Under the pieces are notes generated by a model that was given only the letters and a program-made list of their open reading frames with translations, made no database searches and had not been told where the DNA came from. From Lepidodermella squamata (lineage: Eukaryota; Animalia; Gastrotricha): DNA of 64,000 bases. This document shows, in pieces, positions 30,445 to 50,174 of this stretch. The position numbers and the translations under genes were made by a program. Numbering within the stretch: the stretch's first letter is position 1; every line of letters starts with the position of its first letter. The stretch lies in the NCBI GenBank assembly GCA_047495785.1, contig JBLDXI010000036.1, forward strand, positions 992,001 to 1,056,000, read 5' to 3'.

Positions 30445-30500
30445 AGTAGTATAATGTCCCCTAGGAGGAACGATGTTTAGTGTGGACTTTCATCAAAACC
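30445..30500 (+). repeat. Left TIR of the Polinton
   Basis: AGTAGTATAATGTCCCCTAGGAGGAACGATGTTTAGTGTGGACTTTCATCAAAACC, exact reverse complement of 50119-50174. Confidence 0.98.
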
Positions 30501-30628
30501 CTCGCAGACATAAATGGTAATGATTCACCTACGCTACGTCATCGATAATCCAATGAATAAATTAGGAGGCATCGACATTTAAGGAGATATTAACTAATCT
30601 GTCAACATTACTCATATTTTTACTTCAA

Positions 30629-31150
30629 ATGGCAGATTCATTTTACAGCCCTTTAAGTCCTACTACAACTTACCCATTTTTGTCTAACAAGGCAAGTGAT
30701 TATTTTACAACCAACCCAACATTTAATGCAAACTCAACGGGCATACCTTTGCATGATCAACCTGCATTCGATGTGCCAGATATTACGGCATCAACGCCCG
30801 CTAAAAGCGGCCAACAAAGCCGCACTTCTCAACGTGTAAAAAGTGTTAATCGCTATAACTCTGTTCAAGAAGTAGTAAGCCGACCAATCCGCCAACAACG
30901 AAACAAGGGAAAAGGAGTGAGACAAAACAAGCCGCAAGCAGCCAACAAGCTTAAGAAATTGCACAAACGTAAAAATTTGGGTGAAACGTCGGTTTCTATT
31001 CCTTCATTGACTAGTGCCACATCTGATCATCCGGTTTCATTTTTAGTGGTATTTCATCCGGTACCACAACAAAGCGGCAAATCATATCAGAATTTGATGT
31101 CCCTTATCCAACAAGCATCAACTCATATACTACCATCCAAGTGCCAATAA
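30629..31150 (+). CDS. Low-complexity, basic ORF; possibly the N-terminal exon of the TBP-like gene
   Basis: ATG at 30629; a candidate intron 30988-31046 (GTCGGT...TTTTAG, 59 nt) would join it in frame to the TBP domain. Confidence 0.5.
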   Translation: MADSFYSPLSPTTTYPFLSNKASDYFTTNPTFNANSTGIPLHDQPAFDVPDITASTPAKSGQQSRTSQRVKSVNRYNSVQEVVSRPIRQQRNKGKGVRQNKPQAANKLKKLHKRKNLGETSVSIPSLTSATSDHPVSFLVVFHPVPQQSGKSYQNLMSLIQQASTHILPSKCQ

Positions 31151-31842
31151 GATTTGCAGCCGAGTTTCCCGAGGAGTTACTATTGGCTAGCTCCAACCCA
31201 CAAGATTGCAGTAATTATTCAGTAGAACTTGAAAGAGCAACTGGTGAAATTTACTGTGAATATAATGTTAATTTTTCTATTTCAAATATTATGGCTACTT
31301 GCCAAACCGATCTAATGTTTGATCTACTTTTCCTTTCTCGGCGTATGCCTGGCTCGCGGTACAACCCATCAGTTATGTCATCGGCTCTTTTTTTCAAATT
31401 ACACTATTTGAATGCAACGCTTTTGATTTTTCATTCGGGTAAAATTGTATGCACTGGTACTTCATCTTGCCTGAAATGCATTCAAGCATTCTCTATACTC
31501 AGAAAAAGGCTCGAAGTCGTACTAGGCATCAAAATAAAAAATTCCAAAATCAAATTTTCGAATTTAGTTGTGTTCACAAATTTTAAGAAATCCATAGACT
31601 TGGGGCGCTTAGCACAAGAATTTAAAAGTATCGTAACGTATACACCCGAAACCTTTCCCGGTCTAAGAGTGAAAGTTTTCAGAAAAGGCGCGATGAATAA
31701 GTCTGAGCCTAAATATAATGTTTCTGCAACTTTATATCATACTGGTAAAATGATTTTATCCGGTTGCCCTGACGTCGAAGTTATTATTCAAGCATATATC
31801 AAGTTGTTGCCCATCATCATTTATTTGTTCGGAAATTCATAA
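31141..31842 (+). CDS. Polinton-encoded TATA-box-binding protein (TBP)-like protein
   Basis: Two TBP repeats: SNIMAT...YNP...LLIFHSGKIVCTG and SNLVV...IDL..LA...YTPETFPGL...LYHTGKMILSG; frame open from 31027; true start uncertain. Confidence 0.88.
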   Translation: MPIRFAAEFPEELLLASSNPQDCSNYSVELERATGEIYCEYNVNFSISNIMATCQTDLMFDLLFLSRRMPGSRYNPSVMSSALFFKLHYLNATLLIFHSGKIVCTGTSSCLKCIQAFSILRKRLEVVLGIKIKNSKIKFSNLVVFTNFKKSIDLGRLAQEFKSIVTYTPETFPGLRVKVFRKGAMNKSEPKYNVSATLYHTGKMILSGCPDVEVIIQAYIKLLPIIIYLFGNS

Positions 31843-31976
31843 TAAAGGATTAATTTAATGAATGAAGTTTTTTTTACACTATTTGGGTTGTTTATACAGT
31901 CACTGAATCACACGTGTATTCTCATTGATTTCATTTATCAAATTTATTGCCAGCATCAAATAAAATCATCAAAGTC

Positions 31977-32298
31977 ATGGCAGGTGGGTAATTTAAAAGT
32001 AAAGTGTAAAATTGATTAATTTTTTCAATTAGAAATTCCTTGGAATACTATTGCTTTGGTTGCTTTGACTATGGTTATAAGCGCGCAGGTTTTGTGGGTA
32101 CAATGGTCCTTCGCGTCTATGCAAACGCTATTGGTTCAAGCGGAAACAAGGTCAACAGAAACTGACGAAGCAATCAAGGCTATAAATCAACTGTTTGAAT
32201 ATGTTCACGACCAATTATTCAAATTTATGATTAATTGCACAGTTTTACCATCGTGTAGTAAGCGTCCAATTTCTCCGTCTAAAATAATCAATGGTTAA
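31977..32298 (+). CDS. Small membrane protein, 2 exons (intron 31984-32032)
   Basis: ATG GCA G|GTGGGT...TTAG|AA ATT gives MAEIPWNTIALVALTMVISAQVLWV, in frame with ORF 32056. Confidence 0.6.
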
Positions 32299-33514
32299 AA
32301 CGCGAACGTCAAGCGATGTTTTGTTAGGGAGTTATGAAAATAAAGATGCTCCCCAAGGAGAGGACTCGAATTTGAACAACATCGTTCTCAAGTTGTATAA
32401 TGATCCAGAAATCATTGGAGCATTCCAGGGCATTCATCGGGCCTTTAAACGTATCAAACCTCTGGTACCTCTGAATCTTCGAAAAAAGTTAACTTTTAAA
32501 AAGTTGCGCTCGATTCTACAAACAGATCGCACTTATTCACGGTACAAAGCCCTAAGTACTAGGAACCGTAAGATTTATATGCCGTATGAAGTCTATTCCA
32601 AGGGAGAATTGTTTCTCGCGGATCTTTATGAATGCCAAGAGGCAGCGGCACATAATGATGCTACTAGATATCTTTTAAATATCAAGGATTGTTTCTCACG
32701 ATTTGCTTGGTCCATTCCTCTCTTATCAAAAGAGGGCAAACACACCGCTAGCAAAATAGCAGAATTTCTTACTAGCCTGTCACCAGCTGATAGATGTACA
32801 TCACTGACGACAGATTCAGGTAAAGAATTTAAGAACCAATTTCTTGAGAAAGTTGTAAAAAAATTAGGTATAAATTTCTATACCTCGACCTCTATGTTTC
32901 ACTGTTCTCCGATTGAAATATTTAATCGCTGGCTTCGGAGGATAATTAGCCGTTACCAAATTGCTAATAATACTTTAAGATTTATAGATAAATTGTCTCA
33001 TCTAGTTGATGCTTACAATAGCTTAGTTTGTAAATCCACCGGCTTCTCCCCAAAGGAGCTATGGTTAGCTGCTCCGGATAACCCTATCAATCTTATAGCT
33101 TATCAAAACCTATTCGGAAAACGAGATGAGCTATTAAAAACTAAAATTTCCAACCCTAATTATCAGTCTAAATTTCAAGTTAACGACTGTGTACGCATTA
33201 GTCGTAGTAAAGATCTATTTCATAAGGAGGGTGATTTTATGTTTACAGAGGAATATTTTTTTATCGATCGTATCAATACTCGAACCGTACCAGATAGGTA
33301 TTACCTCAGAGATTCTGAAAATGAAAAAATCAAAGGGGCGTTTTATGACTGGCAATTACAAAAGACCCAACCTAATGAAACTTATCATATCGAGAAAATT
33401 CTAAAATCTCGCACTATAAATGGGGTAAAACAACAACTTGTTCACTGGAAAGGTTGGCCCGTGTCGGCTGCTACTTGGGTTAATGCTGAGGACATTTTTT
33501 CACTCACAAAATGA
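32291..33514 (+). CDS. Retroviral-like (RVE) integrase with C-terminal chromodomain
   Basis: ADL / TDSGKEF / IEIFNR catalytic D-D-E; YHIEKIL...LVHWKGWP...TWV chromodomain. Confidence 0.95.
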   Translation: MVKTRTSSDVLLGSYENKDAPQGEDSNLNNIVLKLYNDPEIIGAFQGIHRAFKRIKPLVPLNLRKKLTFKKLRSILQTDRTYSRYKALSTRNRKIYMPYEVYSKGELFLADLYECQEAAAHNDATRYLLNIKDCFSRFAWSIPLLSKEGKHTASKIAEFLTSLSPADRCTSLTTDSGKEFKNQFLEKVVKKLGINFYTSTSMFHCSPIEIFNRWLRRIISRYQIANNTLRFIDKLSHLVDAYNSLVCKSTGFSPKELWLAAPDNPINLIAYQNLFGKRDELLKTKISNPNYQSKFQVNDCVRISRSKDLFHKEGDFMFTEEYFFIDRINTRTVPDRYYLRDSENEKIKGAFYDWQLQKTQPNETYHIEKILKSRTINGVKQQLVHWKGWPVSAATWVNAEDIFSLTK

Positions 33515-33747
33515 AGTTAATAAATGGCGTGGATTTCGCGACAATTTTTCGACTCGTAGCCAAATTAATTTTCCAGGAGCCGTCAATTCGCGTCGCTAAA
33601 TTTCTATTCGGGTTTATTCTATTGCTGTGGGTATTAGAACTTTGTAAATTTCACTTGAAAAATTACACATGCGTTAGTGTAAATTCGCGTGTTGTTGAAT
33701 TTACCACTTCATCTACGAACATTTCTGATTCATCTACGTCTGTATAA
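33511..33747 (+). CDS. Small hydrophobic protein
   Basis: Fills the gap between integrase and mCP; start overlaps the integrase stop (ATGA); one hydrophobic segment. Confidence 0.4.
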   Translation: MKLINGVDFATIFRLVAKLIFQEPSIRVAKFLFGFILLLWVLELCKFHLKNYTCVSVNSRVVEFTTSSTNISDSSTSV

Positions 33748-33755
33748 AGACAGCA

Positions 33756-34973
33756 ATGTCCTTGCAAGATGATTATCTAATTTATCTCCCTTCCAACTCG
33801 GCACAATTCCCTTTAAATACGCCGGCTGATTTTAAACTTACTCTACCAGTCCCGATATCGGTTCCAGATTGCAGGGCTTACGAAGTGGCTCTATTAGAGG
33901 CGTCCGTGCCATCTAAGTGGAGCAGCATTGATTATCACGACGCCTATATCCTAGATTGTAGTTGGATCAAGGAATCATTTACATCCGACCCTGTTAGGAA
34001 CTATTTACAGATTCCACAAGAGTCTCCGTCCCTGTTTGTTTCCGAAGTTAACCCGTGGCTGTCCAATCACATACAGAAAGTTAAATTTGGGGGTCAATTT
34101 TTTGCTGATATTCAAAAGCTGACGGATCACTTCAGCCTCAAAATAGGGGAATATACTGATGGATGCGTTTTCATGACTTATGATCAACTTTCAAGGCGCG
34201 CAACTTTGGTTTGTAAATGGCCTTATGCCATCTTTTTACCATTGGATTCTGCTGGCCTCTTCGGGTTTACCACTCCAAATCCTTCTACTTTTAACAGGCT
34301 AAGTAAGATCCTTTCAGGGGTATTTGTGTTTCCAGAGCCACCTGAAACACCTAGCGAAGATTTAGCTATGCGCTGCGCTTTCGCGTTAGCAATGTCTTGG
34401 GAATCTCAAGTGAACACAAATTTTGAGCCAACAATCAAATCAACGTTACAAGGCTCTATTCTACTAACGTCAGAAGATCACAAACTTGACCCTAGCCCAA
34501 ACGATGACATGGATAAGCGGCAGCGACAATTTTTCAACCTTGCTAATGTTAGGGACGCAGCTAAACCTAATGAAAATGACCAAGACCTTTCTGAAAGCAC
34601 CAAAATAATATACAAAACAGCTGTTAATCAATGCACTGCAACTTTTAATGTTCAGTTAAATTATGGTATGAATGGATTATTCATCTATTCCTCTCTTGTG
34701 GGAGATGTGATTGTAGGCGATTGCCATGCTAGTTTATTACGTATGATAACTTACTCAACAATGGCCGCAGCTTCAGTTAACAATGACCTATCTTCACATT
34801 TTACAGTAATCTACAACTCGGGCCTGTACTTACCTCTGAGAAGTAATTTTATTGATACAGTATCAGTTGAAATTAGGCGAGATAACGGAGCTATGATTGA
34901 TTTCATAGATGCTGGGTCAAAGGTCCTCTTACTTGTTCACATTCGACGTAAACCAGGATCGCACTTTTTCTAA
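33756..34973 (+). CDS. Minor capsid protein (penton-like)
   Basis: YLPSNS...NTPADF..LP...YEVAL N-terminus; FIYSSLV..VIVGD....LLR...YLPL......SVEIR C-terminus. Confidence 0.88.
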   Translation: MSLQDDYLIYLPSNSAQFPLNTPADFKLTLPVPISVPDCRAYEVALLEASVPSKWSSIDYHDAYILDCSWIKESFTSDPVRNYLQIPQESPSLFVSEVNPWLSNHIQKVKFGGQFFADIQKLTDHFSLKIGEYTDGCVFMTYDQLSRRATLVCKWPYAIFLPLDSAGLFGFTTPNPSTFNRLSKILSGVFVFPEPPETPSEDLAMRCAFALAMSWESQVNTNFEPTIKSTLQGSILLTSEDHKLDPSPNDDMDKRQRQFFNLANVRDAAKPNENDQDLSESTKIIYKTAVNQCTATFNVQLNYGMNGLFIYSSLVGDVIVGDCHASLLRMITYSTMAAASVNNDLSSHFTVIYNSGLYLPLRSNFIDTVSVEIRRDNGAMIDFIDAGSKVLLLVHIRRKPGSHFF

Positions 34974-35057
34974 TTTCCACCCACTTGATATAAATGGCGC
35001 CTTAGTTTATTGTGGATAATGTTGAATATGGAATAATAAACCTAGAAGATTCAAACT

Positions 35058-35642
35058 ATGGTCTACGCCTATAGCAATCATAACGTTGAAAAATATCAGG
35101 ACTTTTTTTTAAGGCAACATTTCTCAGGTAGCGGAGGTGGGTTAAAAGGTAGTGGAAGTTTAGACCACTATCGCGGGAATACCATTCAATTTCCGTACCA
35201 TCACCGTGGTCATGGTATCGGTAATGTAATAGGTAGGCTAATCAGAAATACATATTCATGAGCTTTTTTTTTTTCATATGAAACGTATGCCAACTTAGGG
35301 TCGTTTTTCAGATCGTTTTTCCCGATAATAGCGCCTAGCTTTCTTCAACATGCTATATCAACAGGTCAAAGAATTCTCGGCGACATGCAGCAACCTGAAA
35401 GCAATAGACCATCGCTTGGCGAATCACTTAAACGCCATGGTACCTCTGGGGCATTAGGCCTTGCTAAAGATATCTCTGAAACGGCACTAAAACGCCATTC
35501 TGGGGGCGGGCGTAAAAAACGTAGGAAAACACGTGTAAAACGCAAAATGGCAAGGTCAAAAAAATCAGTTAAGAAAAGATATAAAAGGACCAAGAGAAAA
35601 GGAGCCCCTTCTAGCAGCGCTAAATCTATTCTATTTGAATAA
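35058..35642 (+). CDS. Basic core / DNA-condensing protein candidate, 2 exons (intron 35221 or 35233 to 35298)
   Basis: Spliced RGHGIG|SFFRSFFP; repeated G-x-G motifs; Lys/Arg-rich tail; lies between mCP and MCP. Confidence 0.7.
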
Positions 35643-35669: not shown

Positions 35670-37280
35670 ATGGAAAGTTTAAATGATACATTTGTTCATC
35701 CTGGATCTTCATCGTCAATTGTCCTATCCTCTGATTTGGATATTTTTACGGTTCCGCCGTCACAGTTGGCGGAAGAAAATCAGTTAACAATCGAAGTTTT
35801 CCCAATCGCACCTTTGAACAGTTCAACTAATTTGATTGAATTTGTCATCGGACCCTTTAACGATTATTTGGCATTAGCTAGGACACAATTACTCCTCAAA
35901 TGGCGTGTTGTCAGACAACCATCCGCCCCGCGTTTGAAAGCGACAGGGGAGAACGATGAGCAATACAAAATTTACAAAGATACGCTATCAGCAACCAACA
36001 TTCAAAAGGCGCCGCTATGTTTAGCTCATCATGCTATGTTTAAGGGGTGCGAGGTGTACCTTAATGGAGTTTTAGTCTCAGAGCAATCAACCTTGTATCC
36101 ATATCGAGCTTACATTTCCACACTTCTTTCACATTCGAATGAAGCTAAAGAATCAATTTTAAAGACGCAATTTTTTCAAACCGACACCCCAGGCCACATG
36201 GAAAGCTTCACCGCTGAAAATGTTGGATTTACAGAAAGATTAACCACAGTTCAAGGTGGAACTACTGTTACAACTATGGGGCGGCTTTTTGCGGATCCTA
36301 TGATGACAAGCAGGCTGCTTTTACCTAATGTCGAAGTTCGTGTTAAATTGTACCGCGCGTCAGATAATTTTGCGCTAGTTGGAAAATCAGACTCTGACCC
36401 GCATAGCATTGAAATTCTTTCAGCGAAAATGCTGACGCGAGCAGTTGTAGTTTCCCCTGACGTAGCCATCGCGCATGCAAGGGTGCTTGAGAAAACGTCT
36501 GCCAAGTACCCAGTGTCACGTGTAAGAACGCGTTTATTTCACATTCCTACCAATGTGCTAAGCTATAGCGTAAGTTGAAAAAAGAAATCGAGGAAATGAA
36601 GCGGTATTTACATCTTTTGTTTTGTGGAGCAGATTCCACAAGTTGTTAGTGGCAAGCTGCCGAGACGAATGTTTTTTTGTTTTTTTGAAGGTTTATCCTT
36701 ATTTTCCTTACATACACTGACTTAATACAAAAGTATCGCAGATACAGCTATCAATGGCACACCTGGGAAGAATCCTTTCAATGCTGTCCATCTTAACATA
36801 TCAAGGATTTCCATTTACCTGGGCAATGAGTTGCACCATGCTACAGGTCCGTTGGAGATGGATTTCGAAAAAATTGACGTAACGCGGGCTTACTTGGAGC
36901 TCATGTCAGCTATCAACCCAGATTCACCCTTGAAGTCGTGCTCTTTAACACCGTTGCAATTTATCAAAGGCTTCACAATATTTGGTAATAGATTAACAAG
37001 ATTGAAGAAAGTGATGATTTATCAATGCCTCTTTAGGTTTCGATTTGTCTCGCAATTCTTCGCTACAAAATTATTCTGTTTTACGCACAGGTGTAATCAG
37101 ATTAGAGTTGAATTTTTCTAAACAGGTTACAACCGCAACTCAGCTACTTATTCTAACGGAAACCGATAGCGTTTTTGAGGTTCACCTAAATTGCCAATTG
37201 TTTTTTATTTCATGCCGTTTTGTTTTTATTGCCACGTGATATAGATCACACGTACACGGGATGTTCTTGTGGATGCCTAA
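35670..37280 (+). CDS. Double-jelly-roll major capsid protein, 5 exons, 459 aa
   Basis: LDIF.VPP, YPYRAYI.TLL, LLPNVEVRVKL; introns 36570-36632, 36691-36741, 36985-37036, 37180-37244 restore GKLPRR, NPFN, FGFDL, LELNF. Confidence 0.93.
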
Positions 37281-37298: not shown

Positions 37299-37889
37299 AT
37301 GTATAATAACGAACTCGAAGACTTCATGCAACGGGATCCAACCCTAAAGGCTTTTTCAACAGCAGTTGTTGCCGCTGATCATCTCCCACAGCATTCAATA
37401 GTGTCAAATGTCCCTCAGATTATAATATGTAATACTGGGAATGTGGAAACGTCGAATGGGAAACACTGGATAGCGATTTTTATACCAGATCAGGGTAAAA
37501 ATGAACCTTGCGAGTACTTTGATTCTTTCAGCCTTTCACCAGCGCACCACAACATTTTGATAGATAATTTTCTAAACAAGAATAGCCAATCTTCGATTCC
37601 TTACATCGAAGCTCAACATCCCTATCAACACCCTATGTCGCAAGTCTGTGGCCTATGGTCGCTATATTTCTGCTTTCTTCGTTCTAGAGGAAAGACGTTT
37701 CAACAAATTCTCAACCATTTTGATAAGCTAGATTCATCAAGAGTAGTTCATGGAGCTTTAAAATTACATATAAAAGACTGCATGCTCTATAGAATCATGT
37801 CGCGAATTTATAAAAATTATCACTTGTCCTTGAAACCGTTGAACAAAATCAAGCCCTCATTTTGTGCTGGTGTTAATGGCAAACTTTGA
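37299..37889 (+). CDS. Adenain-like cysteine protease (virion maturation)
   Basis: ICNT...GKHW, EYFDSF, YQ....QVCGLW. Confidence 0.93.
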   Translation: MYNNELEDFMQRDPTLKAFSTAVVAADHLPQHSIVSNVPQIIICNTGNVETSNGKHWIAIFIPDQGKNEPCEYFDSFSLSPAHHNILIDNFLNKNSQSSIPYIEAQHPYQHPMSQVCGLWSLYFCFLRSRGKTFQQILNHFDKLDSSRVVHGALKLHIKDCMLYRIMSRIYKNYHLSLKPLNKIKPSFCAGVNGKL

Positions 37890-40917: not shown

Positions 40918-43900
40918 TTAGGCTTCCATCATTCGTCTGTCACTGTTATTATCATCATTATTATTTGCAGTGTAATATCCGTGCGGATAGCAAATGAAAG
41001 AAGTGCCCTCCGGCAGTAGCCAACGCTTACTGTATGTGAAATTGATTTTCTTGGTAGTCTTCACGAAGCGAATAGTTGCCAGAGGAGCATCTTGTTTCTT
41101 GAACAAGTTTTGATCAATAACAGCAAGCGGTTGCTGGTTGTTTTTAGCTTTGGAGTAGTTTTGGCTGCTACGACAGGTTGAAGCTACAGACTCATTGCTA
41201 CTAAGCACGATATGGCTTATAAACTTGTAAAACTCTAATATACTTCGGCTGTAGAAATTTTGACGTATTCCCTTGGTTCGAAAAAAGTCAATTTCTAGCT
41301 TTTCATCTCACAGATATTTATGCGCTAACCTTTAGCATCAGCTTGCATTCATTGTTTGAATAGAGGACAGCGTAGGACTGTGTTGTCAGAATTCAAGAAA
41401 ATAAAATAAAACATATGTGTATAAAAAAAAAACTCACTTTGCAACCTAATACAGCCATAGCTACTATGCGCTGGTTTGCTTCCAGTTGATCAGTCAATCC
41501 ACCTAATATAGGGGCTGTCATTTCAAGTTTGGGTATTCCCGGCCCCTGAATGCAGAAAATGCTATCCGTATCTGCACGGTGTTTGCAAACAAAAAATGAG
41601 ATGTTAGTATGGGGGAGTTGGGAAAAGGTGCAAATTATTACCACTGTAGATGGCATATCGACCAACTTGGTTCAAAGCTCTAGCTAATTTAACTCGACTA
41701 TGCGATGTGACAAAAGCTGCCACTATAGTAGACGTAGATCCTAGCGGCACCTCAGCATCAGCTGTCGCCTTTGACGTCACCTTGAGTCGTCTGACGTCCT
41801 CTGGATGTCTCAGATTACCAATTGGTTGGGCATCGAGCACTTGAACATCGCGATTTTTCAGCATTTGTTGCATTAGGAAGGGAGAATTTACGTAGCTTAT
41901 TTTCTCTTGGTTATTACGCATAGCAAACCGCCCGAACAGACTGTAATCGCAATGGGGTAACAAAATATTATAGCTTATCAGTAAGACAAGCAACTCTTTT
42001 TTACCTGTTAAGCATTAATTTACCAATAGTTCGCAACCCTGGATTCTTCTGTTCCAACTTGGCCCCATCGATTGGAATGCCAATATCAGCCCATTGTTTG
42101 AGATAGTGCGCCTTTTCATCGACCGTCTCACAGTTTGTCGGCCAGCCAGAACTTTCAGCCTTGAGGGTTGTGAAGCGTTTGATGAAGGCTTTGAACACGC
42201 TATTGCTTTTCTTAAATTCCCAAATCTTGACAACAAAAAATGTGTTAACAGTGTAAGCAGCGGTGGCGTAAAATGCGTGCTTTTCTATTACCTCAAAAAC
42301 TTCGAGCAGCTTGTATCCGTTCTCCTCCGTGGCATACTTCAATTCTGGCGAGCAATAAGCTCCAATCCAACTTCTTTCAAAGTCACTGTGGCTGCATGGT
42401 ATTGCACGTAACTGCGTTTGGTTTTTAACGTCGGCCGAAGAACAAGAATAACATAGACTAAAAACCAGCTTTTCCTGTTTGTTCCCTGAAATAAATTTGA
42501 GTTATATAACCAGAAGGAGGTCTCAAAATGTGGATTCAACCAACTGAAGCATAGAACAGGTAGCCATAAATTCCGAGGTGGTAGGACCTGTAGTAATTTC
42601 AGATTATAATCACACTATGAAAATAATGAGAGACTTCTACCCTAGCTTGTACTATTCCGAAGAAGTCGTCGCGTTTGTAAATTTCCTGCAATTTCTCATT
42701 ATTCAGTCGGTAATCTAACGTTGATTGAGATGGTGGTCCAATTGGCATGTCACATGAAAAGAGCGTCGATGGATAAAGACCTGAGTGAATTTCCACAAAG
42801 GTAGGTCTAGCTATTTTCCATTAGGAAAGAGTCAACATACTGTTGAAGTCACTGCTGACAATGCTGTAGTCGGGGCTAGGAAATATAAATTCGTCTGTTG
42901 TCACTCCGTGGCTGTTGCAAATTTCCACAATGCGTTCCAAATGCTCTGCTGTAGGTGAAGCTGTATCTTGTTGTTTCGAGGCTGTTGATCTTTGAGCTAT
43001 GAGAGCAAGCAGCCTAAAAGCCTCAACGCGACCTTTTCAAATTTAAAAAAAAGAAATAAAGTTCAAAATGTGGTCAAATTTAGCTCGTCGGAACCTCCAT
43101 AGAAGAAGCTTCGATTTGTCATTGGTGGCGCCAATTTGACATTTTCATAAATCTGCTTCGCTCGCGCATTTTGCTTGAAAATCTCTCGAATCGAATGTTC
43201 CCAAAAACTAACGAGCTCATAGCCGTGGCTACGGAAAATAGCCTCGCGCTGCATTGTTTGGCTGTATACCTCATAATTTGGTTGACCCTGGAACCAATTG
43301 ATGAATTCACCGGAATTGCAGATCAAGCATGAATGTATGGCGCACCCATAGACTTCAACTATTAAATCTGGTTTGCCAGAGCTAGGGTCCCGTTGAACGT
43401 AACCATCTATGCGCCAATTTCGGCCATCAAGATTCAGCCGGATTTCTTGCTTGTTATTCTGTGCATGTTTCATGCCTGCATAAACAGCTGGCTCACTTTC
43501 CATCAAGTACTCAAGGAAGGCGATACTCAACTTGGAATGAGTGTCACGACCGCACCATCCAGCAGCTGGAACCACAGCCAGACATTGCTTTTCGAGAAAA
43601 AGCTTCCGAAAGCAGACATTGGCCACAGATGGTGTCGTGATGCATTCCCGGAAGCAGTCAGTTGAACAAAGCTCAAGCATCAAATTTCGAAATTTGATGC
43701 AGCATTTTTCTAAAACTACAACATCTCGTATGCAGTATTCGAGTAGAACTTTGCGTAACGAAAACACTTTGCTCCTGTTTTCTGTGTAAAATTTATCAAA
43801 TTCAACCAGCTCCGATTGAGGCATGGTTGATGGTGAATATAGCTCCCTATCTGGTAGGTTTGGCAGCTCCAAGGTCATGCTAAATGGTTAGAAATTATCA

Positions 43901-46133
43901 GTTGGCAGATGTGAGGAAATATTGTGACAAAAAAGCACTACTTTTCCCTAGTGATCAACGAGTATGGGAACCAGGTTTTCGCGCAATCAGCATCACTTAT
44001 GCCCATAGTAGAAGGAAGATCTCTGGCGATGGTAGGAAAAAAAAACACAACCGAAGCTGAATAGAACCAAAAAATAGTGAAATATAATGTAAGCTGCTTA
44101 CCTCAGTCGAGTTTGCGTAAAAAGTATTGAATCAATGAAACGAAGGCTATTTCGCGGGATTTCAAGTGACAGAATTGACCCTTGGCGCTGTATGACTGTG
44201 ATTGCCGTTTGCCGGATTTGAAGCTCGCGCAGAAGTAGCAACCCGTCGAAATTGGCAAAGTTGTGCGCTATAGCAATCGAGTGAGCGTTGTTAGCATTAA
44301 GCAGCCAATTTGCAAAGTCCTTTAAGCAATGCTGTCCGTAAAAAATGTGCAAGCCGCAGCTTGAGTGACACTTTTTGTGCCTCCATTCAATGCAATGTGC
44401 TATACATAAAAATTTCGCTGTCACCAAACATGGTTCAAACACTGAATCATTCTCAGCGGATGTTGCAAAACATTCAAAATCGAAGAAAATGAGGTTTTGA
44501 TACTTCTTCAGACTGCTAGATTCTATAGGCTGGAGAGGAGTGTTAAGAAGCCTATTTGGTTGTAGCATGCTTTATTCTTACCAAAGGATTAATGAAGCAG
44601 ACGTGTTTATCTCGATTCTCCCTGAAAAACCGATCGCCGCATACGTAGCATTTGATTCCCGTGCAATTTGTTTGATGTTTCGGTAAATCAACTATTTTAA
44701 CGCCACATCTCTTGCATTTTTGTCGGTCGGTACATTTATGCGCTGTTTTGCAAGACTTGGAGTATAGAACTATAGACGTAGAAATAGGTGCTCATTTAAA
44801 ATTCTGCTAAACCACATAATGTGGGAATACCTGATGAACAGTTTTTACATCGGTCGATAGTTTTGGAGAGACTGGCTAATGAAAACTCAGCAGAATAGCG
44901 ACAGATTTTACCCGCCCTTTCTATAGAGTACAAAATAATTTCCCCCGGTGATTAATTTTTAATCTACTCACCACACGAAGAACAAGAGAGTTTGCATTTA
45001 TGTAGCGATTTGATCGATCTGGTTCGAAAACATATAGGACAGACGCTCTGCGCTGTGCTGACGGTTTGTTTCATGTAGTTAGCTGAGGCTATCACATGAA
45101 AGTGTCCTATGCCATCAAAGCCCGGCTCTTCCTCCGAGTAGTAATGAAGTAGGACAATAGCTAACAAGCTCAGTGATCTCAAGTGGTCGAAATCTGGGAT
45201 CTCGCGAACGATATCATTGGCGCTATGTGAATACACCACGATTCTGAAAGTGTTACTTCCAGGATCTAGAGCTTGGTACAACGCCTCTAGATGCTCGTCG
45301 ATGGAATATGAAGGCAGATCTAAAGGCAACCCTGCGGCTAGCATAAGTTTGACAGCTTCTTGATATTGCTTATTCGCCGATCGTTTCCTTATCAACTCGT
45401 ACGCTAGCCGCAATTGGCGATTTTTTGGATCAGCTTTCGACCTTGCAAGTGCAGCGCCCACACATAAAGCTCTACTGAGACATAAATTGTTTGGTTCCGT
45501 TGACTTATGGCTGATTTGAATTATTGATCGAGTTCTTAAAAAAAAGGAGTCTATACTCTCTGCCGTGCGTCGCTTAGATCGCGTTCCGCCAGCCAGATGG
45601 TTATTTTCAGGTCGTTCGATTACAAAAACTCGAATGGTCCATTCACCAGCAAAAGACAAGTCTTCATTGCTATTTAGAACCTCGCGAACACGGTCGAAAA
45701 TGGACCGGTTAAGTAGCTCATCTTTTTCCATAAAAGGTAAGGCAAATGGAGACCTCAAGTCTGGGTGATACAACGTCAAGCGAACATGACACCCGTCTGG
45801 TAAGTCTTGATGGATGTTTTGAACTAAATCTGTTAACATGTTGGCAAGCAAATTGAAACGGGTCTCAAGATCAGCATTAATTACGAGCTGGTTGTCCAGG
45901 ATTTGAGAAAAGGTCCTTACATTGTTTATCTCAGCTTCATTCGCGCCACCTGCAAAGTGAACATTGCCAGATGATGAATAGGATTCTGGTAATGAGGAGA
46001 TGAAGCTATCAGCAAAGTTTGACCCAACGGGTTGAATGAAGTACTCTTGTGAGTACAGTTGAAACCTCGAAGAATGTATTCGCCGATTAGTCTTAAGAAA
46101 ATTGTATGCAATAGTTAGGTTGCTATCGTCCAT
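40918..46133 (-). CDS. Protein-primed family B DNA polymerase (pPolB), 15 exons, 1452 aa by manual splicing
   Basis: Introns 44971-44921, 44830-44770, 44581-44530, 44101-44023, 43941-43880, 43094-43033, 42840-42781, 42640-42588, 42544-42486, 42291-42226, 42004-41941, 41641-41572, 41437-41378, 41329-41272; restores FDFE, HNFANFDG, YCIRDV, YGGRVE, DFNSLYP, KLMLNSLFG, YSDTDS. Confidence 0.93.
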
Positions 46134-46317: not shown

Positions 46318-46914
46318 TTAAAGTATCTGATTCGACATGTTAGTCATTGATAGTCGCATTCCTATTGAATCGTTGACGTTTTACCTGCTGCTGTTAGCAG
46401 CAACTGTTCAAAGTCAATAACAGCTCCGGCCATGTCTTGAAATTGGCTGGCAATTAGAGTTATGCCGTTTTTCGTCGGGCGTTTTGTGCCTAGAAAGACT
46501 CGAAGAGTTAGACAATATTAGCTGAGTAGATTTTTCAAATTTACCATCTGCGTGAAGACTCATGGTTCGAAAATTAAGGCGGATTGGTGACAGTTCAGGC
46601 ACGAAGATAGATGCCATGACGTTGAGTTTAGGGAACGAAAATGTGAAATCTATATTATGCGCCAGTAGTGCAATTTTAGCCGCGTCAATCCAAACATGCT
46701 TTGGTGGTTTGAAAAATGGCACAAATTCCTTAAGAAACGCGTCCTGTCGCATCATCAGGCCTTTTGTTTGCCCATATTTTTGTTCGCTCTCGCCATTACT
46801 TTCCTGCTGAATGACGATAAGATGTTTGTCCTGAGAGTGTTGTTTTATGACCATATCCCCGCCAAAGTGAACGAAAATCAAACTCTCAGACTGTTCGTGG
46901 TTAGTAGACGCCAT
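46318..46914 (-). CDS. Tandem PC4-like (ssDNA-binding / coactivator-fold) protein, at least 2 exons; 3' end uncertain
   Basis: Intron 46544-46490 yields IRLNFR...DGTKRPTKNGITLIASQF, matching the PC4 motif (IDIR...KPGRKGISL...QW); first repeat LIVIQQ...QTKGLMM. Confidence 0.65.
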
Positions 46915-46988
46915 TACAAAAAATCAGAAAAAAATCACAGAAATTCTAAGATGAAGAAAAAGATGGAAAATGTGAATATTCTTATTAT

Positions 46989-47786
46989 TCAGACATGAAT
47001 GGGAAATAACCCCGGCCAACGTGAATTTAACCCAAGAAATTGGTCTCTAAAGACATCAGCGGCCCATGCCGAACCAACAATCTTCGAAGCGAGAACTAAT
47101 TGATTCGTTCCAGATTGAATGCTTGAATTAGTGCTTGATAGGCCGACACGCCATATGGCTCGGTCAATAAGGTGAAAGATGTGGCGAACAGTGCATTTTT
47201 TGCCTTGATAATTTTTAAGCAAATCAAAAAGCATATGTTCAACAAAAATGCTACGGCCAATGTTGTTACCAAGTGGGCCGCTTAGTTGGTAATCAAACTG
47301 CTTTGGGCGCCGGATAGTACACTTCGATTTACCAGAGAATTCAGGTATAAAACACTCCGACTCACTTCTGGCGTCTTCCGGAGTGAAAAACCAGTGATCA
47401 TCGCCATTATCAATTAGAGTTTGCAGCCGTTTGTCACTAGTGTCCTTGAGGAGAGTCTGCCATCGTGTAAGGCCGACAACACTTAGAATGGCCCCATCTT
47501 CTTCCGTTTGCTTTGGCAATGAAGCAGTTAGGTAATCTTCACGCAATTGATTTAAATTAAGCCGATTTATGGCGCGGGATGTGGCAAATGTGATGTGCTC
47601 CAACGTTAGGCAAGTGCCCCGAAAACAGGAGAGAAAGTCGAAAATCGCGATTTCAAGGAAAGCGCGACGGCCTGAAGTCAGGTTCATAGAATGTACAAAA
47701 GATTGTGGAGCATTGAAGATGCCGTCACCCTTGGCAAAAAATGAAGCTTCAAAGGAAGAGTCATATTCACGACGGGAGTGATCCAT
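46989..47786 (-). CDS. Hypothetical protein with an internal duplicated domain (265 aa)
   Basis: GRRAFLEIAIFDFLSCFRGTCLTLEHITFATSRAINRLNL versus GRSIFVEHMLFDLLKNYQGKKCTVRHIFHLIDRAIWRVGL. Confidence 0.7.
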   Translation of the reverse strand: MDHSRREYDSSFEASFFAKGDGIFNAPQSFVHSMNLTSGRRAFLEIAIFDFLSCFRGTCLTLEHITFATSRAINRLNLNQLREDYLTASLPKQTEEDGAILSVVGLTRWQTLLKDTSDKRLQTLIDNGDDHWFFTPEDARSESECFIPEFSGKSKCTIRRPKQFDYQLSGPLGNNIGRSIFVEHMLFDLLKNYQGKKCTVRHIFHLIDRAIWRVGLSSTNSSIQSGTNQLVLASKIVGSAWAADVFRDQFLGLNSRWPGLFPIHV

Positions 47787-47847
47787 ATTAAAATATAAGA
47801 GACTAAAGGTGTGGAAAAAAGTAAGTTAGTTCACAGCACTCGCACAC

Positions 47848-48222
47848 TTATTTTTTATTGGGACACACTATTGTATGCATTTCTATTTCCTGCCAACATA
47901 AAGCAACTTTACAACCATAGTCTTTAAATACACACTCGAATAATAAGTTTTCAATAAGATTACTGAGTACAACAGGTGGTTTAAATAACTCATGAGGAGA
48001 TAAAAGGGTCCTGCAAAGAGGGCAAGGGGTTGTACGAGTCGCAGAATTTTGAATAAAAGCAAGGCAACAAGAAGTGCAAAAAAGATGGCCGCATTTTGTT
48101 GACAATGGTTTGTTCAAAATTAATAAACAAATAGGACACTGCAATGATATTAAATCTATTGATAACGTGCTTGAAATTGAAACACGATTGGGTTCCATAA
48201 ATGGTATCAGGTTACTGTTCAA
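47848..48222 (-). CDS. RING-HC finger plus TRAF-type zinc-finger protein (putative E3 ligase)
   Basis: CPIC...CGHLFCTSC...CPLC; C....GC..........H...CP. Confidence 0.85.
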   Translation of the reverse strand: MNSNLIPFMEPNRVSISSTLSIDLISLQCPICLLILNKPLSTKCGHLFCTSCCLAFIQNSATRTTPCPLCRTLLSPHELFKPPVVLSNLIENLLFECVFKDYGCKVALCWQEIEMHTIVCPNKK

Positions 48223-48914
48223 TTTTTAACAACGTTAGATATAAACTTGAGAGATTCGTCGAGAACTTCAGTGGCATTTTTGTAACCCGTTTCGATAATG
48301 ATAACGGGGCATTTGAAAAGATGTGCATTTAAACAACATAATGAATTATAATTATCCTGCACAGAGTTCAAATAGTCTTGAGATATTGGCTCTTCAGACA
48401 AACGCCCACGATTGGCAATGCGGCCTTCTGCCACAGTAACGGTAGACTGGAGAAAAATTAAGGCGTCTAATTTGACGAAATTTGGTTCAAATTGATTATA
48501 GAGATGTACAAGTGACGCGTACATCAAAGGGTCTAATTTAGTGAACTCTAGCGCGGCAGGTAAGAATACATACCGAGAACAGAAAGGTGTTCTATCATGT
48601 ATGATGAATGTTGACCTTTCAGGGTTACCAAGGAAGTTTACAGCGGAGAACTGTTGGCACATATCTACCGTGGCGATGAGTTGAAATATTGCCGGGATAT
48701 TACCTAGATCATCATAATAGCCACGTAACAAGTTGACAGGAGGTACAACGGCGGTCCAGTTTTCCCAAGATGCAACCGGTTCTGGTTGAACGATCGCAAC
48801 ACAATTTGTGAATTTAGCAGCTCTAGGGATCGCATGCCGCAGATGATCGCAAAGCGTCGATTTTCCAACGCCAATATTCCCGATAACCCCAATGTGATAA
48901 AAACAATTAGCCAT
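48219..48914 (-). CDS. Deoxynucleoside kinase (dNK family)
   Basis: GNIGVGKST P-loop, EPV..W, DR, RI..RGR..E, YL. Confidence 0.9.
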   Translation of the reverse strand: MANCFYHIGVIGNIGVGKSTLCDHLRHAIPRAAKFTNCVAIVQPEPVASWENWTAVVPPVNLLRGYYDDLGNIPAIFQLIATVDMCQQFSAVNFLGNPERSTFIIHDRTPFCSRYVFLPAALEFTKLDPLMYASLVHLYNQFEPNFVKLDALIFLQSTVTVAEGRIANRGRLSEEPISQDYLNSVQDNYNSLCCLNAHLFKCPVIIIETGYKNATEVLDESLKFISNVVKN

Positions 48915-49047
48915 TTTGACTAGAATAGAGCGCCGAATGGTGGAATTAGTTTGTTTTCACTTGTTAAATAGTACCATAAAATGATAAATTTTTTATATGA
49001 ATGCACTTAGATTAAATAAATTGCAAATAAATATTAAGACAAAATCT

Positions 49048-49267
49048 GATGCCAAAGAATTTAACAACTGCTTGATGACATAATAAAGTGATATACAAAT
49101 AAATATTATGGCGATGTTGATGCCAAGGAATTTAACAGCCGCCTTAATGACGTAATTAGGTGATTTTCCAATGAATATTCAGGTGATGTTGATGCCAAGG
49201 AATTTACCAACCGCTTTAATGACATAATTAGGCGATTTTCCAATGAATATTCAGGTGATGTTGATGC
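49048..49267. repeat. Three ~72-bp tandem repeats in the divergent dNK/dUTPase intergenic region
   Basis: GATGC anchors at 49048, 49119, 49191, 49263. Confidence 0.9.
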
Positions 49268-49391
49268 ATTGCGGCAGCTCAACTGTTACATCAAGTGGTT
49301 CTCCAGTAAATGTAATAACTGAACCTCTTCATGATTGAGAGAACTCATTTTAAATCACGTAAACTAAAGTTATCATAAATCCACCATTGTA

Positions 49392-49910
49392 ATGAGTGCG
49401 AACATCGACCGAGAAATTATTTTCAAAGTTGAGGCTGAACTGTGTACCCCTGGGGCACTGTTACCTAGGCGAGGAACTACTAATTCAGCTGGATTTGATT
49501 TATTCTCACCTGAGGACTTCGGTATTCAGCCTTTAAGCCGGTATACGGCTTCCCTAGGGATCCGCTTGCTGTTCCCTAGTGGTTGTTTTGGTCTGATTGT
49601 AAGTCGATCTGGATTGGCTAGTAACCATGGATTAATGGTAATGTGTGGTCTAATTGGTTAGTTTTTTATTTTGCGCTTTCAATGTATCATAATATCAAGT
49701 AACATCTTAGATAGTGACTATCGCGGGACTATTTCTGTATGTCTGTTCAACACAACTGATGTGAAATATGATGTTCACACGCATGATCGCATAGCCCAAA
49801 TTATCTTCATGAATCCCGGCAGCTTTGATATTGTAAAGATGGATCAAATTGAAGCAAAAAGAATGGCAACAGATCGTGGCAACGGAGGATTCGGTTCCAC
49901 GGGAAAATAG
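49392..49910 (+). CDS. Trimeric dUTPase, 2 exons (intron 49657-49710), 154 aa
   Basis: SAGFDL, RSGLA, GLI|DSDYRG, DRIAQ, RGNGGFGSTG. Confidence 0.95.
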
Positions 49911-50118
49911 ATGTCGTTCATCACCCGTTGTTTACAACTTCACCATGAAGTTCATTCATCTGATAAAAAACACTCATGTAGGTTATAGAGTGTACTTGTT
50001 ATCTTTTTTTTTGAGTGTCATTTAACATAAATTGGTTCGTAATTTATTGATTAAAATTGATTAACATTACAATAGGCGTATGTTGTTTTTTAAAGCACAG
50101 TATTATCATGTTTGCAAA

Positions 50119-50174
50119 GGTTTTGATGAAAGTCCACACTAAACATCGTTCCTCCTAGGGGACATTATACTACT
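50119..50174 (-). repeat. Right TIR of the Polinton
   Basis: Exact reverse complement of 30445-30500; followed by AACGTG. Confidence 0.98.

What the first reader, a model, noticed from the sequence alone, without database searches (positions are those of the whole stretch)
30445..50174. Intact, intron-rich Polinton virus: at least 24 short spliceosomal introns in viral genes
Seen: the apparently broken genes become stop-free, frame-consistent proteins after removing GT-AG segments of 49-79 nt (pPolB 14, MCP 4, ATPase 2, core protein 1, dUTPase 1, PC4-like 1, small membrane protein 1). TIRs and TSD are perfect, and nearby host introns are of similar size (47-57 nt). Known: Polinton/Maverick core genes are usually single-exon ORFs. 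Inference: this is a recently active viral lineage with massive intron gain, dependent on host nuclear splicing and easily mistaken for a decayed element. Integrase, mCP, protease, dNK and RING are intronless, so gain is gene-specific.
Basis: partly seen in the sequence, partly recalled or inferred. Interest (0 to 1): 0.95.

Follow-up and report, generated by a model that had tools for sequence, protein, structure and literature searches.

The report
Intact Polinton with spliceosomal-type introns
A complete virus-like Polinton/Maverick element sits in an animal genome with 22 short GT-AG introns in five of its genes, including the DNA polymerase and the major capsid protein, although such genes are normally assumed to be intronless and interrupted copies are normally scored as dead.

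Summary
The observation largely holds. Window 30445-50174 is a 19.7-kb Polinton/Maverick-type element. It has 56-nt identical terminal inverted repeats, a 6-bp target-site duplication (AACGTG), and pPolB, rve/chromo integrase, major capsid protein, protease and A32-type ATPase genes.

I wrote a spliced protein-to-genome aligner (GT..AG introns only, no frameshift state, stops forbidden) and ran it against intronless homologues. It places 22 introns of 51-79 nt: pPolB 14, MCP 4, ATPase 2, a small core-like gene 1, dUTPase 1. With predicted exons joined as they stand, all five genes run ATG-to-stop with no internal stop.

- **Not decay:** simulated frameshifts can also be bridged, but cost 12-15 reference residues each. 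Here none are lost, and the segments are extra DNA.
- **Signal:** GT-AG scored best of 177 boundary pairs tested. The segments are AT-rich (GC 0.33 vs 0.43, p = 3e-12) and unrelated to one another.
- **Intronless genes:** integrase, protease and the aligned C-terminal part of the putative minor capsid gene take no intron; dNK and RING are single ORFs.
- **Unverified:** two of the 24 claimed introns and the "PC4-like" label.
- **Inferred only:** splicing in vivo, recent activity, and gain rather than loss. No sibling copy was found.

The papers I could read treat Polinton core genes as intronless. I rate this a new variant of a known kind.

The parts
30439..30444 (.). left copy of the 6-bp target-site duplication (AACGTG)
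   Evidence: read directly; same hexamer at 50175-50180
30445..30500 (+). left terminal inverted repeat, 56 nt identical to the right end; starts 5'-AG
30629..31150 (+). ORF of 173 aa, function unknown (cargo region between left TIR and integrase)
   Evidence: no Pfam hit
31141..31842 (+). very divergent TATA-binding-protein-like gene, both TBP repeats; true start codon uncertain
   Evidence: Pfam TBP E = 2.6e-27, two stretches; solved TBPs only E = 1e-13 to 1e-15; only two weak database relatives
32291..33514 (+). integrase (rve core plus chromodomain), 407 aa, single exon
   Evidence: Pfam; aligned end to end with L002 and L007 integrases with no intron
33511..33747 (+). ORF of 78 aa, function unknown
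   Evidence: no Pfam hit
33756..34973 (+). putative minor capsid (penton) protein, 405 aa, single exon
   Evidence: position upstream of the core-like and MCP genes; C-terminal similarity to the equivalent genes of L002, L001 and L007; fold not tested
35058..35642 (+). small core-like gene, 172 aa after joining 2 exons; 1 predicted intron (66 nt)
   Evidence: spliced alignment to the 136-aa protein encoded between mCP and MCP in L007: score 117, 43/124 identical, 1 intron; the same segment is the top signal-model candidate there; ATG-to-stop with no internal stop
35670..37280 (+). major capsid protein gene, 459 aa after joining 5 exons; 4 predicted introns (51-65 nt)
   Evidence: spliced alignments to P0016, P0017, L002 and L007 MCPs cover the references almost end to end; model of homologue P0016 matches double-jelly-roll capsid proteins such as Sputnik, mavirus and PBCV-1, E = 1e-11 to 1e-13
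37299..37889 (+). adenain/Ulp1-like cysteine protease, 196 aa, single exon
   Evidence: Pfam Peptidase_C48 and C5 at E about 1e-3, below cut-off; aligned to the L007 protease without intron, score 162
37876..38732 (+). A32/FtsK-type packaging ATPase gene, 241 aa after joining 3 exons; 2 predicted introns (75 and 56 nt)
   Evidence: Pfam Pox_A32 on one exon; spliced alignments to L002 and L007 ATPases give the same two introns
38802..39194 (+). ORF of 130 aa, function unknown
   Evidence: no Pfam hit
39218..40852 (+). ORF of 544 aa, low-complexity (acidic runs, proline-rich, basic tail), function unknown, single exon
   Evidence: no Pfam hit
40918..46133 (-). [quoted passage not shown]
   Evidence: Pfam DNA_pol_B_2 on exons; spliced alignment to 12 full-length pPolBs; uninterrupted 1452-aa reading frame; no excess of gaps at junctions; Exo I-III and Pol A and C motifs present; motif B straddles a junction (read off); controls
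46414..46914 (-).
46989..47786 (-). ORF of 265 aa, function unknown
47848..48222 (-). RING-finger protein ORF, single exon
   Evidence: Pfam zf-C3HC4 family, E = 1e-8
48219..48914 (-). deoxynucleoside kinase, 231 aa, single exon
   Evidence: Pfam dNK E = 4.8e-24; similar to the dNK of relative L002
49392..49910 (+). dUTPase gene, 154 aa after joining 2 exons; 1 predicted intron (54 nt)
   Evidence: Pfam dUTPase on both pieces with overlapping profile ranges; both pieces match solved dUTPases; spliced alignment to a phage dUTPase covers residues 10-153 of 153 with 61/135 identical
50119..50174 (-). right terminal inverted repeat
50175..50180 (.). right copy of the target-site duplication (AACGTG)

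Best explanation
The segment is a complete, integrated Polinton/Maverick-type virus-like element of an animal. Its MCP family resembles that of insect (wasp) Mavericks.

Five of its genes are split by 22 short U2-type (GT-AG) spliceosomal introns. These are the polymerase, the major capsid protein, the packaging ATPase, a small core-like protein and the dUTPase.

**Shown in silico.** The segments are discrete pieces of extra, AT-rich DNA relative to intronless homologues. They are bounded by GT and AG. They are about the size of the few host introns seen in this window. Leaving them out as they stand gives full-length, motif-complete proteins.

**Inferred.** These genes can yield functional protein only if they are transcribed in the nucleus and processed by the host spliceosome. 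The element copies itself as DNA, so the introns are passed on to every copy. They were most likely acquired within this lineage, because all retrievable homologues lack them. Intron distribution is strongly gene-specific, and the reason is unknown.
For: **Element identity.** TIRs and TSD. Pfam hits for pPolB, rve plus chromo, A32 ATPase, protease, dNK, dUTPase and RING. The model of MCP homologue P0016 matches double-jelly-roll capsid proteins. Gene order matches the intronless relative L007.

**Introns.**
- Twelve full-length pPolB references align over 781-1217 codons (947 or more for 11 of them) at about 31% identity, with no frameshift state and stops forbidden. Eight intron positions are placed identically by at least 10 of 12 references and a ninth by 8 of 12.
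- Joining exons gives a 1452-aa ORF.
- Junctions carry 1.2 gap residues per 12-aa window, against 2.0 in the background.
- 18 of 19 tested introns shift the frame or carry an in-frame stop if retained.
- Unaligned reference residues are 41-79. An intact relative gives 43-123 and versions with 14 simulated frameshifts give 161-302.
- GT-AG scores 908, against a mean of 728 and a maximum of 853 for 176 other boundary pairs.
- Intron GC is 0.327 and exon GC 0.434, Mann-Whitney p = 2.6e-12. Lengths modulo 3 were 8/7/6 for the 21 introns analysed.
- Polymerase motif C sits at a junction and motif B straddles one (motif B read off).
- Relatives' pPolB genes are single uninterrupted ORFs.
- MCP 4, ATPase 2, core-like 1 and dUTPase 1 are each reproduced with independent references.

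**Negative controls.** Integrase, protease and the mCP C-terminus take no intron. The truncated relative L001 cannot be bridged. The decayed relative L009 gives pseudo-introns without AT bias.
Against: - There is no transcript evidence, so splicing is inferred.
- Splice signals are weak. A position-weight model trained on 16 of the introns finds 3-4 equally good candidates per kb on both strands everywhere in the window, so signals alone do not predict these introns.
- Four or five pPolB introns lie in poorly conserved stretches. There the references disagree on exact borders, and the last one has two frame-compatible alternatives.
- One pPolB intron is a multiple of three with no stop, so it is not required by the reading frame.
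- Only one copy is available, so selection, age and activity cannot be measured.
- The reference proteins come from ORF-based gene calls, which biases the comparison toward intronless relatives.
- The host species was not identified.
Confidence: 0.8

Rival explanations
1. The element is a decayed copy. The interruptions are ordinary stops and frameshifts, and the GT-AG 'introns' are artefacts of choosing bridgeable segments.
For: GT and AG are frequent, and my aligner bridged 14 simulated frameshifts in an intronless relative with pseudo-introns of 37-70 nt. The signal-only model has no specificity. Genewise-type tools are known to report insertions in decayed Mavericks as 'introns' (PMC8097293).
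Against: - Bridging real frameshifts costs about 12-15 homologous residues each. Here none are lost.
- The pPolB gene is 857 nt longer than its coding sequence, and that surplus lies in 14 discrete pieces of 51-79 nt.
- GT-AG beats all 176 other boundary pairs tested.
- The segments are AT-rich relative to the exons, unlike the pseudo-introns of the decayed relative L009.
- No stop or frameshift remains in any of the five genes after exon joining, and the other ORFs are intact.
Confidence: 0.04
2. The copy is an old, vertically inherited or host-co-opted resident. The introns were acquired in the host germline at this locus or in a purely intragenomic transposon lineage. There is no recent activity and no virus-like phase.
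For: - Introns are typical of long-resident nuclear genes and of many DNA transposons.
- Only 56 nt of TIR is available, which cannot date the insertion.
- No second copy was found in any collection.
- Relatives reach only about 30-35% protein identity.
Against: - Every detectable gene inside the TIRs is intact, including the capsid, protease and packaging genes that co-option of a single function would not preserve.
- The TSD and TIR tips are unmutated.
- GC3 of the element's genes (0.27-0.44) is below that of the neighbouring host genes (0.47-0.54), so the element has not converged on host composition.
- Twenty-two gains at one locus after insertion would need far more time than the intact ends suggest.
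Confidence: 0.12
3. The segments are copies of a short intron-generating mobile element (introner-like) that colonised the element, as reported for Maverick/Polinton-like proviruses of dinoflagellates.
For: [quoted passage not shown] The narrow size range would fit a single family.
Against: The 21 introns compared share no similarity beyond 8-14-nt AT or T runs. Outside themselves, their only window matches at E <= 0.01 are one extra match each for three T-rich introns. The 22nd (core-like) intron was not included in that comparison. Sizes match ordinary short introns rather than a repeated unit.
Confidence: 0.04

Closest known systems
Vertebrate and nematode Mavericks/Polintons (Barreat & Katzourakis 2021, PMC8097293; Widen et al., bioRxiv 2022.07.12.499685; Jeong et al. 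2023, PMC10748475)
   Same: Same architecture: TIRs, a 6-bp TSD, pPolB, rve integrase, double-jelly-roll MCP, minor capsid protein, adenain-like protease and A32/FtsK ATPase in two oppositely oriented modules. Accessory or cargo genes lie near the ends.
   Different: In those elements the core genes are reported as intronless. In nematodes only captured cargo genes carry introns. Here five genes carry 22 introns between them: the pPolB, MCP and ATPase core genes, a small core-like gene, and the accessory dUTPase. Protein identity to anything retrievable is only about 30-35%.
Intronless metagenomic relatives fetched here (L007, ENA ERZ27251024 k141_2819842; L002, a TARA scaffold)
   Same: Same local gene order (PRO-MCP-core-mCP-INT) with homologous MCP, core-like protein, ATPase, integrase and protease. 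L002 also has a dNK.
   Different: All their genes are single uninterrupted ORFs. L002 has a different replication protein. L007 carries a WW plus PC4 protein for which I found no counterpart here.
Introner-bearing Maverick-Polinton-like proviruses of dinoflagellates (Gozashti et al. 2025, PMC11957031)
   Same: Full-length integrated Polinton-like elements that contain spliceosomal-type introns.
   Different: There the introns are copies of identifiable mobile introner families in protist hosts. Here the segments are unrelated to each other, the host is an animal, and 14 of them sit in one polymerase gene.
Adenoviruses
   Same: Evolutionary relatives by established knowledge: protein-primed PolB, double-jelly-roll hexon, adenain protease, nuclear replication. 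They are DNA viruses whose expression depends on host splicing.
   Different: Adenoviral splicing joins leaders to intact coding bodies from long transcription units. It does not cut coding sequences into many 50-300-codon exons by about 60-nt introns.
Intron-containing eukaryotic DNA transposon genes (for example the P element or Helitron transposases; from general knowledge)
   Same: Mobile DNA whose own genes need host splicing and pass their introns to DNA copies.
   Different: Those are not virus-like elements with a capsid module.

Membership tests
Polinton/Maverick (polintovirus, adintovirus-like) elements | [quoted passage not shown] | tested here: met
   Pfam DNA_pol_B_2 on exons. There are 1918 homologues, the best being full-length pPolBs. 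Exo I-III and Pol A and C motifs are present in the exon-joined product; motif B straddles a junction (read off).
Polinton/Maverick (polintovirus, adintovirus-like) elements | retrovirus-like (rve) integrase | tested here: met
   Pfam rve (25.4 bits, below the 32.6 cut-off) plus Chromo (above cut-off). Homologues carry rve plus Chromo.
Polinton/Maverick (polintovirus, adintovirus-like) elements | double-jelly-roll major capsid protein | tested here: met
   Indirect. The model of homologue P0016 (33% identical to exon 1) has low confidence (pLDDT 51), but it matches Sputnik, mavirus, PBCV-1 and PRD1 capsid proteins at E = 1e-8 to 1e-13, and a Cotesia bracovirus Maverick protein at 34% identity. 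The window's own spliced MCP could not be handed to the fold tools.
Polinton/Maverick (polintovirus, adintovirus-like) elements | minor (penton) capsid protein | tested here: inconclusive
   The assignment rests on position and on C-terminal similarity to the equivalent genes of L001, L002 and L007. Fold not tested.
Polinton/Maverick (polintovirus, adintovirus-like) elements | adenain/Ulp1-like maturation protease and A32/FtsK packaging ATPase | tested here: met
   Protease: Pfam C48 and C5 at E about 1e-3, below cut-off, plus homology to the L007 protease. ATPase: Pfam Pox_A32 plus spliced alignment to the L002 and L007 ATPases.
Polinton/Maverick (polintovirus, adintovirus-like) elements | terminal inverted repeats and a 6-bp target-site duplication | tested here: met
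   56-nt identical TIRs starting 5'-AG, and the TSD AACGTG. The TIRs are shorter than the 100-1500 bp usually quoted (PMC10748475).
U2-type spliceosomal introns | GT...AG boundaries fitting better than other boundaries | tested here: met
   22 of 22 by construction. GT-AG ranks first of 177 boundary pairs for pPolB. Position +3 is A or G in 16 of 22, and position -3 is C or T in 19 of 22.
U2-type spliceosomal introns | non-coding insertion relative to intronless homologues, with the frame restored on removal | tested here: met
U2-type spliceosomal introns | size and composition like the host's own introns | tested here: inconclusive
   Only one host intron (50 nt) is supported by homology, and a few more are visible by eye. 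The intron AT bias is shown. A signal model has no specificity.
U2-type spliceosomal introns | removal from transcripts in vivo | not testable with these tools
   No expression data for the unidentified host.
Introners (intron-generating transposons) | many mutually similar copies | tested here: not met
   No intron-intron similarity among the 21 introns compared (the core-like intron was not included). Outside themselves, the only window matches at E <= 0.01 are one extra match each for three T-rich introns. The host genome outside the window could not be searched.
Self-splicing group I / group II introns | ribozyme core recognisable by covariance models; length of hundreds of nt | tested here: not met
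   The Rfam gathering scan of the window finds only three U2 snRNA genes. The segments are 51-79 nt.

The most novel reading that the evidence does not exclude
An animal Polinton lineage has become intron-rich in genes including the polymerase, major capsid protein and packaging ATPase while keeping every gene intact. Its expression would then be obligatorily nuclear and spliceosome-dependent. Intact elements of this kind would be systematically miscounted as dead by the ORF-based screens on which current Polinton and endogenous dsDNA-virus censuses rest. If sibling copies exist, the lineage would also be a dated, natural series of recent intron gains in genes with intronless outgroups.
Probability: 0.5. 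Interest if true: 0.8.

Novelty: new variant of a known kind. Interest (0 to 1): 0.68.

Why it matters
- **Censuses.** 'Intact' Polintons/Mavericks are currently recognised by uninterrupted ORFs, and endogenous dsDNA viruses are mined with prokaryotic gene callers on the stated premise that they lack introns (PMC8097293, PMC10120064, bioRxiv 2025.04.19.649669). An intact element whose polymerase gene has 15 exons shows that this premise can fail. Censuses of active elements may therefore be biased, at least in short-intron hosts.
- **Biology.** Introns in capsid, packaging and replication genes tie expression to the nucleus and the host spliceosome. That bears on the unresolved question of whether animal Polintons live as viruses, as transposons, or as both.
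- **Intron gain.** Twenty-two introns in genes whose homologues have none would be a clean case for studying intron gain and its gene specificity, if further copies can be found.

**Caveat on novelty.** I could not read Kapitonov & Jurka 2006 or Pritham et al. 2007, so an earlier mention of intron-bearing Polintons cannot be excluded.

Tried and rejected
- **Signal-only intron prediction.** A PWM for donor, acceptor and composition trained on 16 introns gave 3-4 candidates per kb on both strands in host and element alike. Held-out introns ranked 1st-4th among 7-22 local candidates. It is too weak to stand alone.
- **L002's 1150-aa replication protein as a pPolB reference.** It is unrelated to the window's polymerase.
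- **L001 (2.4-Mb eukaryote contig).** It holds only a truncated MCP and no pPolB within reach. It serves only as a negative control.
- **L009 (224-kb eukaryote contig).** I examined its fragmented pPolB as a possible intron-bearing relative. It has one large insertion and three short discontinuities without AT bias, none at positions shared with the window. I judge it decayed.
- **PC4-like gene.** Tested with Pfam, PDB and the L007 PC4 protein. Not supported.
- **Sibling copies.** Exact-protein look-ups for integrase, dNK and a host glycosyltransferase found nothing. The TIR tip is absent from IMG/VR and the JGI metagenomes.
- **Host identification.** Not achieved. There are no tRNAs. Only metazoan-type Cys-loop receptor domains point to an animal.
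- **TBP-like gene.** The database search gave two weak hits in uninformative contexts.
- **An optional fifth MCP 'intron'.** It is in frame, has no stop, lies inside the long first exon, and was proposed by two of three references. L007's MCP does not need it. The aligner prefers an intron to a long gap, as it also did inside an intact host ORF. I did not count it.
- **Literature.** Kapitonov & Jurka 2006, Pritham et al. 2007 and Krupovic & Koonin 2015 are not held.

- Scripts printed the aligner's predicted intron coordinates as part of testing the splice model. This report gives counts and size ranges only.
- For L009, searches printed the aligner's predicted positions in reference-protein coordinates, and one search also printed the boundary sequences of its three short segments, before I judged that copy decayed.
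- Exon-joined translations were kept only in scratch files for scoring.
- Short generic family-B polymerase motif patterns were typed as regular expressions from general knowledge.

Full report
**What is there.** Window 30445-50174 is bounded by inverted repeats that are identical for 56 nt from the tips and then diverge. The 24-nt tip occurs nowhere else in the window. The hexamer AACGTG flanks both ends (30439-30444 and 50175-50180).

Pfam identifies the following inside the repeats:
- an rve plus chromodomain integrase
- an adenain/Ulp1-like protease (weak hit)
- a Pox_A32-type ATPase fragment
- several DNA_pol_B_2 fragments on the minus strand
- a RING finger, a deoxynucleoside kinase and a two-piece dUTPase

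The surrounding DNA carries Cys-loop receptor domains, Laminin_G domains, a cluster of single-exon glycosyltransferase paralogues, reverse-transcriptase ORFs and a tandem array of U2 snRNA genes. The host is therefore an animal, but I could not name it.

**Relatives.** Nothing close exists in the collections I could search. The best integrase, MCP and pPolB relatives are 32-35% identical. Exact look-ups and a TIR search found no sibling copy.

Two metagenomic contigs are useful intronless comparators:
- L002 (a TARA scaffold) has a dNK, an ATPase, an integrase and a 435-aa MCP, but an unrelated replication protein.
- L007 (16.4 kb) has a 1399-aa single-ORF pPolB and the same local gene order protease-MCP-small protein-minor capsid-integrase, plus an ATPase and a WW+PC4 protein.

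The pPolB of P0046 is also one uninterrupted ORF.

**Testing the splice model.** I did not pick GT-AG segments that bridge stops. I wrote a GeneWise-like local protein-to-DNA aligner that allows only GT..AG introns of 35-300 nt, has no frameshift state and forbids stop codons.

- **pPolB.** Twelve full-length pPolB representatives gave scores of 698-977 and about 31% identity over 781-1217 codons. They often covered the reference to its last residue. Eight introns were placed at exactly the same bases by at least 10 of 12 references, and a ninth by 8 of 12. The remainder lie in poorly conserved stretches. With 14 predicted introns of 51-79 nt left out, the exons as they stand read as one 1452-aa ORF from ATG to stop. 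Two alternatives for the last intron are both in frame.
- **MCP.** Four references agree on four introns. The product is 459 aa, and the references are covered almost end to end.
- **ATPase.** Two introns.
- **Core-like gene.** The small gene between the minor and major capsid genes has one intron, supported by its L007 homologue.
- **dUTPase.** One intron, supported by a phage dUTPase and by overlapping Pfam and PDB ranges of its two halves.

That makes 22 introns. The median is 60.5 nt and the total 1339 nt. Integrase, protease and the aligned C-terminal part of the minor capsid gene took no intron. Unrelated queries scored 38-72.

**Is this more than an aligner artefact?** A stop-free GT-AG path is not evidence by itself. 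When I introduced 14 random single-base frameshifts into the intronless pPolB gene of L007, the aligner bridged most of them with pseudo-introns of 37-70 nt. Four things separate the window from that null:

1. **Residue loss.**

| Target | Reference residues left unaligned |
|---|---|
| Simulated frameshifted genes | 161-302 |
| Intact relative | 43-123 |
| Window | 41-79 |

   Junction neighbourhoods hold 1.2 gap residues per 12-aa window, against 2.0 elsewhere. The segments are therefore extra DNA, not former coding sequence.
2. **Boundary specificity.** GT-AG gave the highest score (908) of 177 donor/acceptor dinucleotide pairs tried. The others had a mean of 728 and a maximum of 853, although GT is one of the rarer dinucleotides in the region.
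3. **Composition.** Intron GC is 0.327 and exon GC 0.434 (p = 2.6e-12). The pseudo-introns the aligner makes in a decayed relative (L009) show no such bias.
4. **Necessity.** 18 of 19 tested introns shift the frame or contain an in-frame stop if retained. Polymerase motif C lies at an exon junction, and motif B straddles one (read off).

The 21 introns compared share no sequence similarity with each other, so they are not copies of an introner (the core-like intron was found later and was not included). Rfam finds no self-splicing intron.

The weak point is the splice signal. The consensus is loose: position +3 is A or G in 16 of 22 and position -3 is C or T in 19 of 22. A model trained on these introns has no genome-wide specificity.

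**What I could not reproduce.**
- The 'PC4-like' gene with one intron rests on a 19-residue Pfam match at E = 0.039. It failed a PDB search and a guided alignment with L007's PC4 protein.
- The intron in a 'small membrane protein' has no homologue to test against.
- 'Host introns of 47-57 nt' is supported by only one 50-nt intron from paralogue-guided alignment, plus a few seen by eye.

**Capsid identity.** The spliced MCP cannot be passed to the fold tools, so I modelled its 33%-identical intronless homologue P0016. The model has low confidence (pLDDT 51). Even so, Foldseek returns only double-jelly-roll capsid proteins at E down to 4e-13: Sputnik, mavirus, PBCV-1, iridovirus and PRD1. The best viral hit is a Cotesia bracovirus protein at 34% identity, which belongs to a wasp Maverick. 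This points to the insect-type Maverick/adintovirus neighbourhood.

**How it most likely works.**
- **Shown:** a structurally complete Polinton in which five genes are interrupted by intron-like insertions, and in which no stop or frameshift remains once the predicted exons are joined.
- **Inferred:** these genes must be transcribed in the nucleus and spliced by the host machinery. The element's own TBP-like protein would fit nuclear, Pol II-type expression, but nothing tests that. Because replication is DNA-templated, the introns are inherited by copies. Because every retrievable homologue is intronless, gain in this lineage is the parsimonious reading. The comparators come from ORF-based gene calls, which cannot see intron-bearing relatives, so this polarity is not secure.

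Intron distribution is strikingly uneven. There are 22 introns in 7,449 nt of coding sequence, none in 7,632 nt of nine other ORFs, and none in the first 1.16 kb of pPolB itself. This has no accompanying difference in base composition, and I have no explanation for it. GC3 of the element's genes is below that of the neighbouring host genes, so the element has not taken on host composition.

**Against what is known.** In the papers I could read:
- Intact vertebrate Mavericks are defined by intronless ORFs, 'in agreement with' the original description (PMC8097293).
- Nematode Maverick core genes are intronless, and only cargo genes have introns (bioRxiv 2022.07.12.499685).
- Large screens assume endogenous viruses lack introns (PMC10120064; bioRxiv 2025.04.19.649669).
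- The one report of introns in Polinton-like proviruses concerns mobile introners in dinoflagellates (PMC11957031).

I could not access Kapitonov & Jurka 2006 or Pritham et al. 2007. On this basis the finding is a new variant of a known kind, not a new kind of element.

**Verdict.** The interpretation 'intact, intron-rich Polinton easily mistaken for a dead one' is supported. 'Recently active', 'massive gain' and 'dependent on splicing' remain inferences that transcript data and sibling copies would decide.

Noticed in passing
window 1-12430 (U2 genes at 374-569, 5768-5963, 11162-11357; RT ORFs at 2597-4855 and 7991-10249): A tandem array with a 5394-nt period: two full units about 98% identical plus a partial third. 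Each full unit holds a complete U2 snRNA gene and a 752-aa reverse-transcriptase ORF at about 60% GC, in a 40-45% GC genome (the partial third unit holds only the U2 gene). From memory this is reminiscent of U2-gene-targeting non-LTR retrotransposons. Here the retroelement appears to have been amplified together with the U2 unit.
   Followed up: partly
window 31141-31842 (+): The element encodes a very divergent TBP-like protein with both repeats (Pfam E = 2.6e-27). Solved TBPs match only at E = 1e-13 to 1e-15, and only two weak database relatives exist. No in-frame ATG precedes the first repeat, so the true start, or an upstream exon, is unresolved. I know of no TBP-like gene reported in Polintons.
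   Followed up: partly
window 27037-28092, 50699-51754, 53440-54468, 55063-56106 (+): The element is inserted inside a cluster of single-exon paralogues of about 350 aa. The Gly_transf_sug domain was confirmed only for the first. The 53440 ORF showed no such hit, and the other two were not scanned.
   Followed up: no
window 18589-19524 (-), 24957-25718 (-), 60163-62186 (+): Host genes combine Laminin_G_3 domains with Cys-loop receptor ligand-binding or transmembrane domains, in two paralogous copies on either side of the element. One 50-nt host intron was confirmed by aligning one paralogue to the other.
   Followed up: partly
window 13160-15469 (-): A second, intact-looking 769-aa reverse-transcriptase ORF of ordinary GC content (44%).
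   Followed up: no
window 39218-40852 (+): A 544-aa ORF inside the element with long acidic runs, proline-rich stretches and a basic serine/lysine tail. It has no family match and no intron. It may be a DNA-associated or terminal protein, but this was not tested.
   Followed up: no
L007:13660-14280 (-) and the whole of L007: The intronless 16.4-kb metagenomic relative has the same capsid-module gene order and a WW+PC4 protein. PC4-domain proteins therefore do occur in this group, even though I could not confirm one in the window.
   Followed up: partly
L009 (ENA ERZ25069870, 224-kb contig), about 7300-12200 (+): A fragmented pPolB in a eukaryotic contig, 43-47% identical to the intronless references. 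It has one large insertion and three short discontinuities. I judged it decayed. No position is shared with the window's introns.
   Followed up: yes
window 42226-42291 region of the pPolB gene (one of the 14 introns): One pPolB intron is a multiple of three with no in-frame stop. Its retention would not break the frame, although all 12 references skip it. It could be an alternatively retained segment.
   Followed up: no
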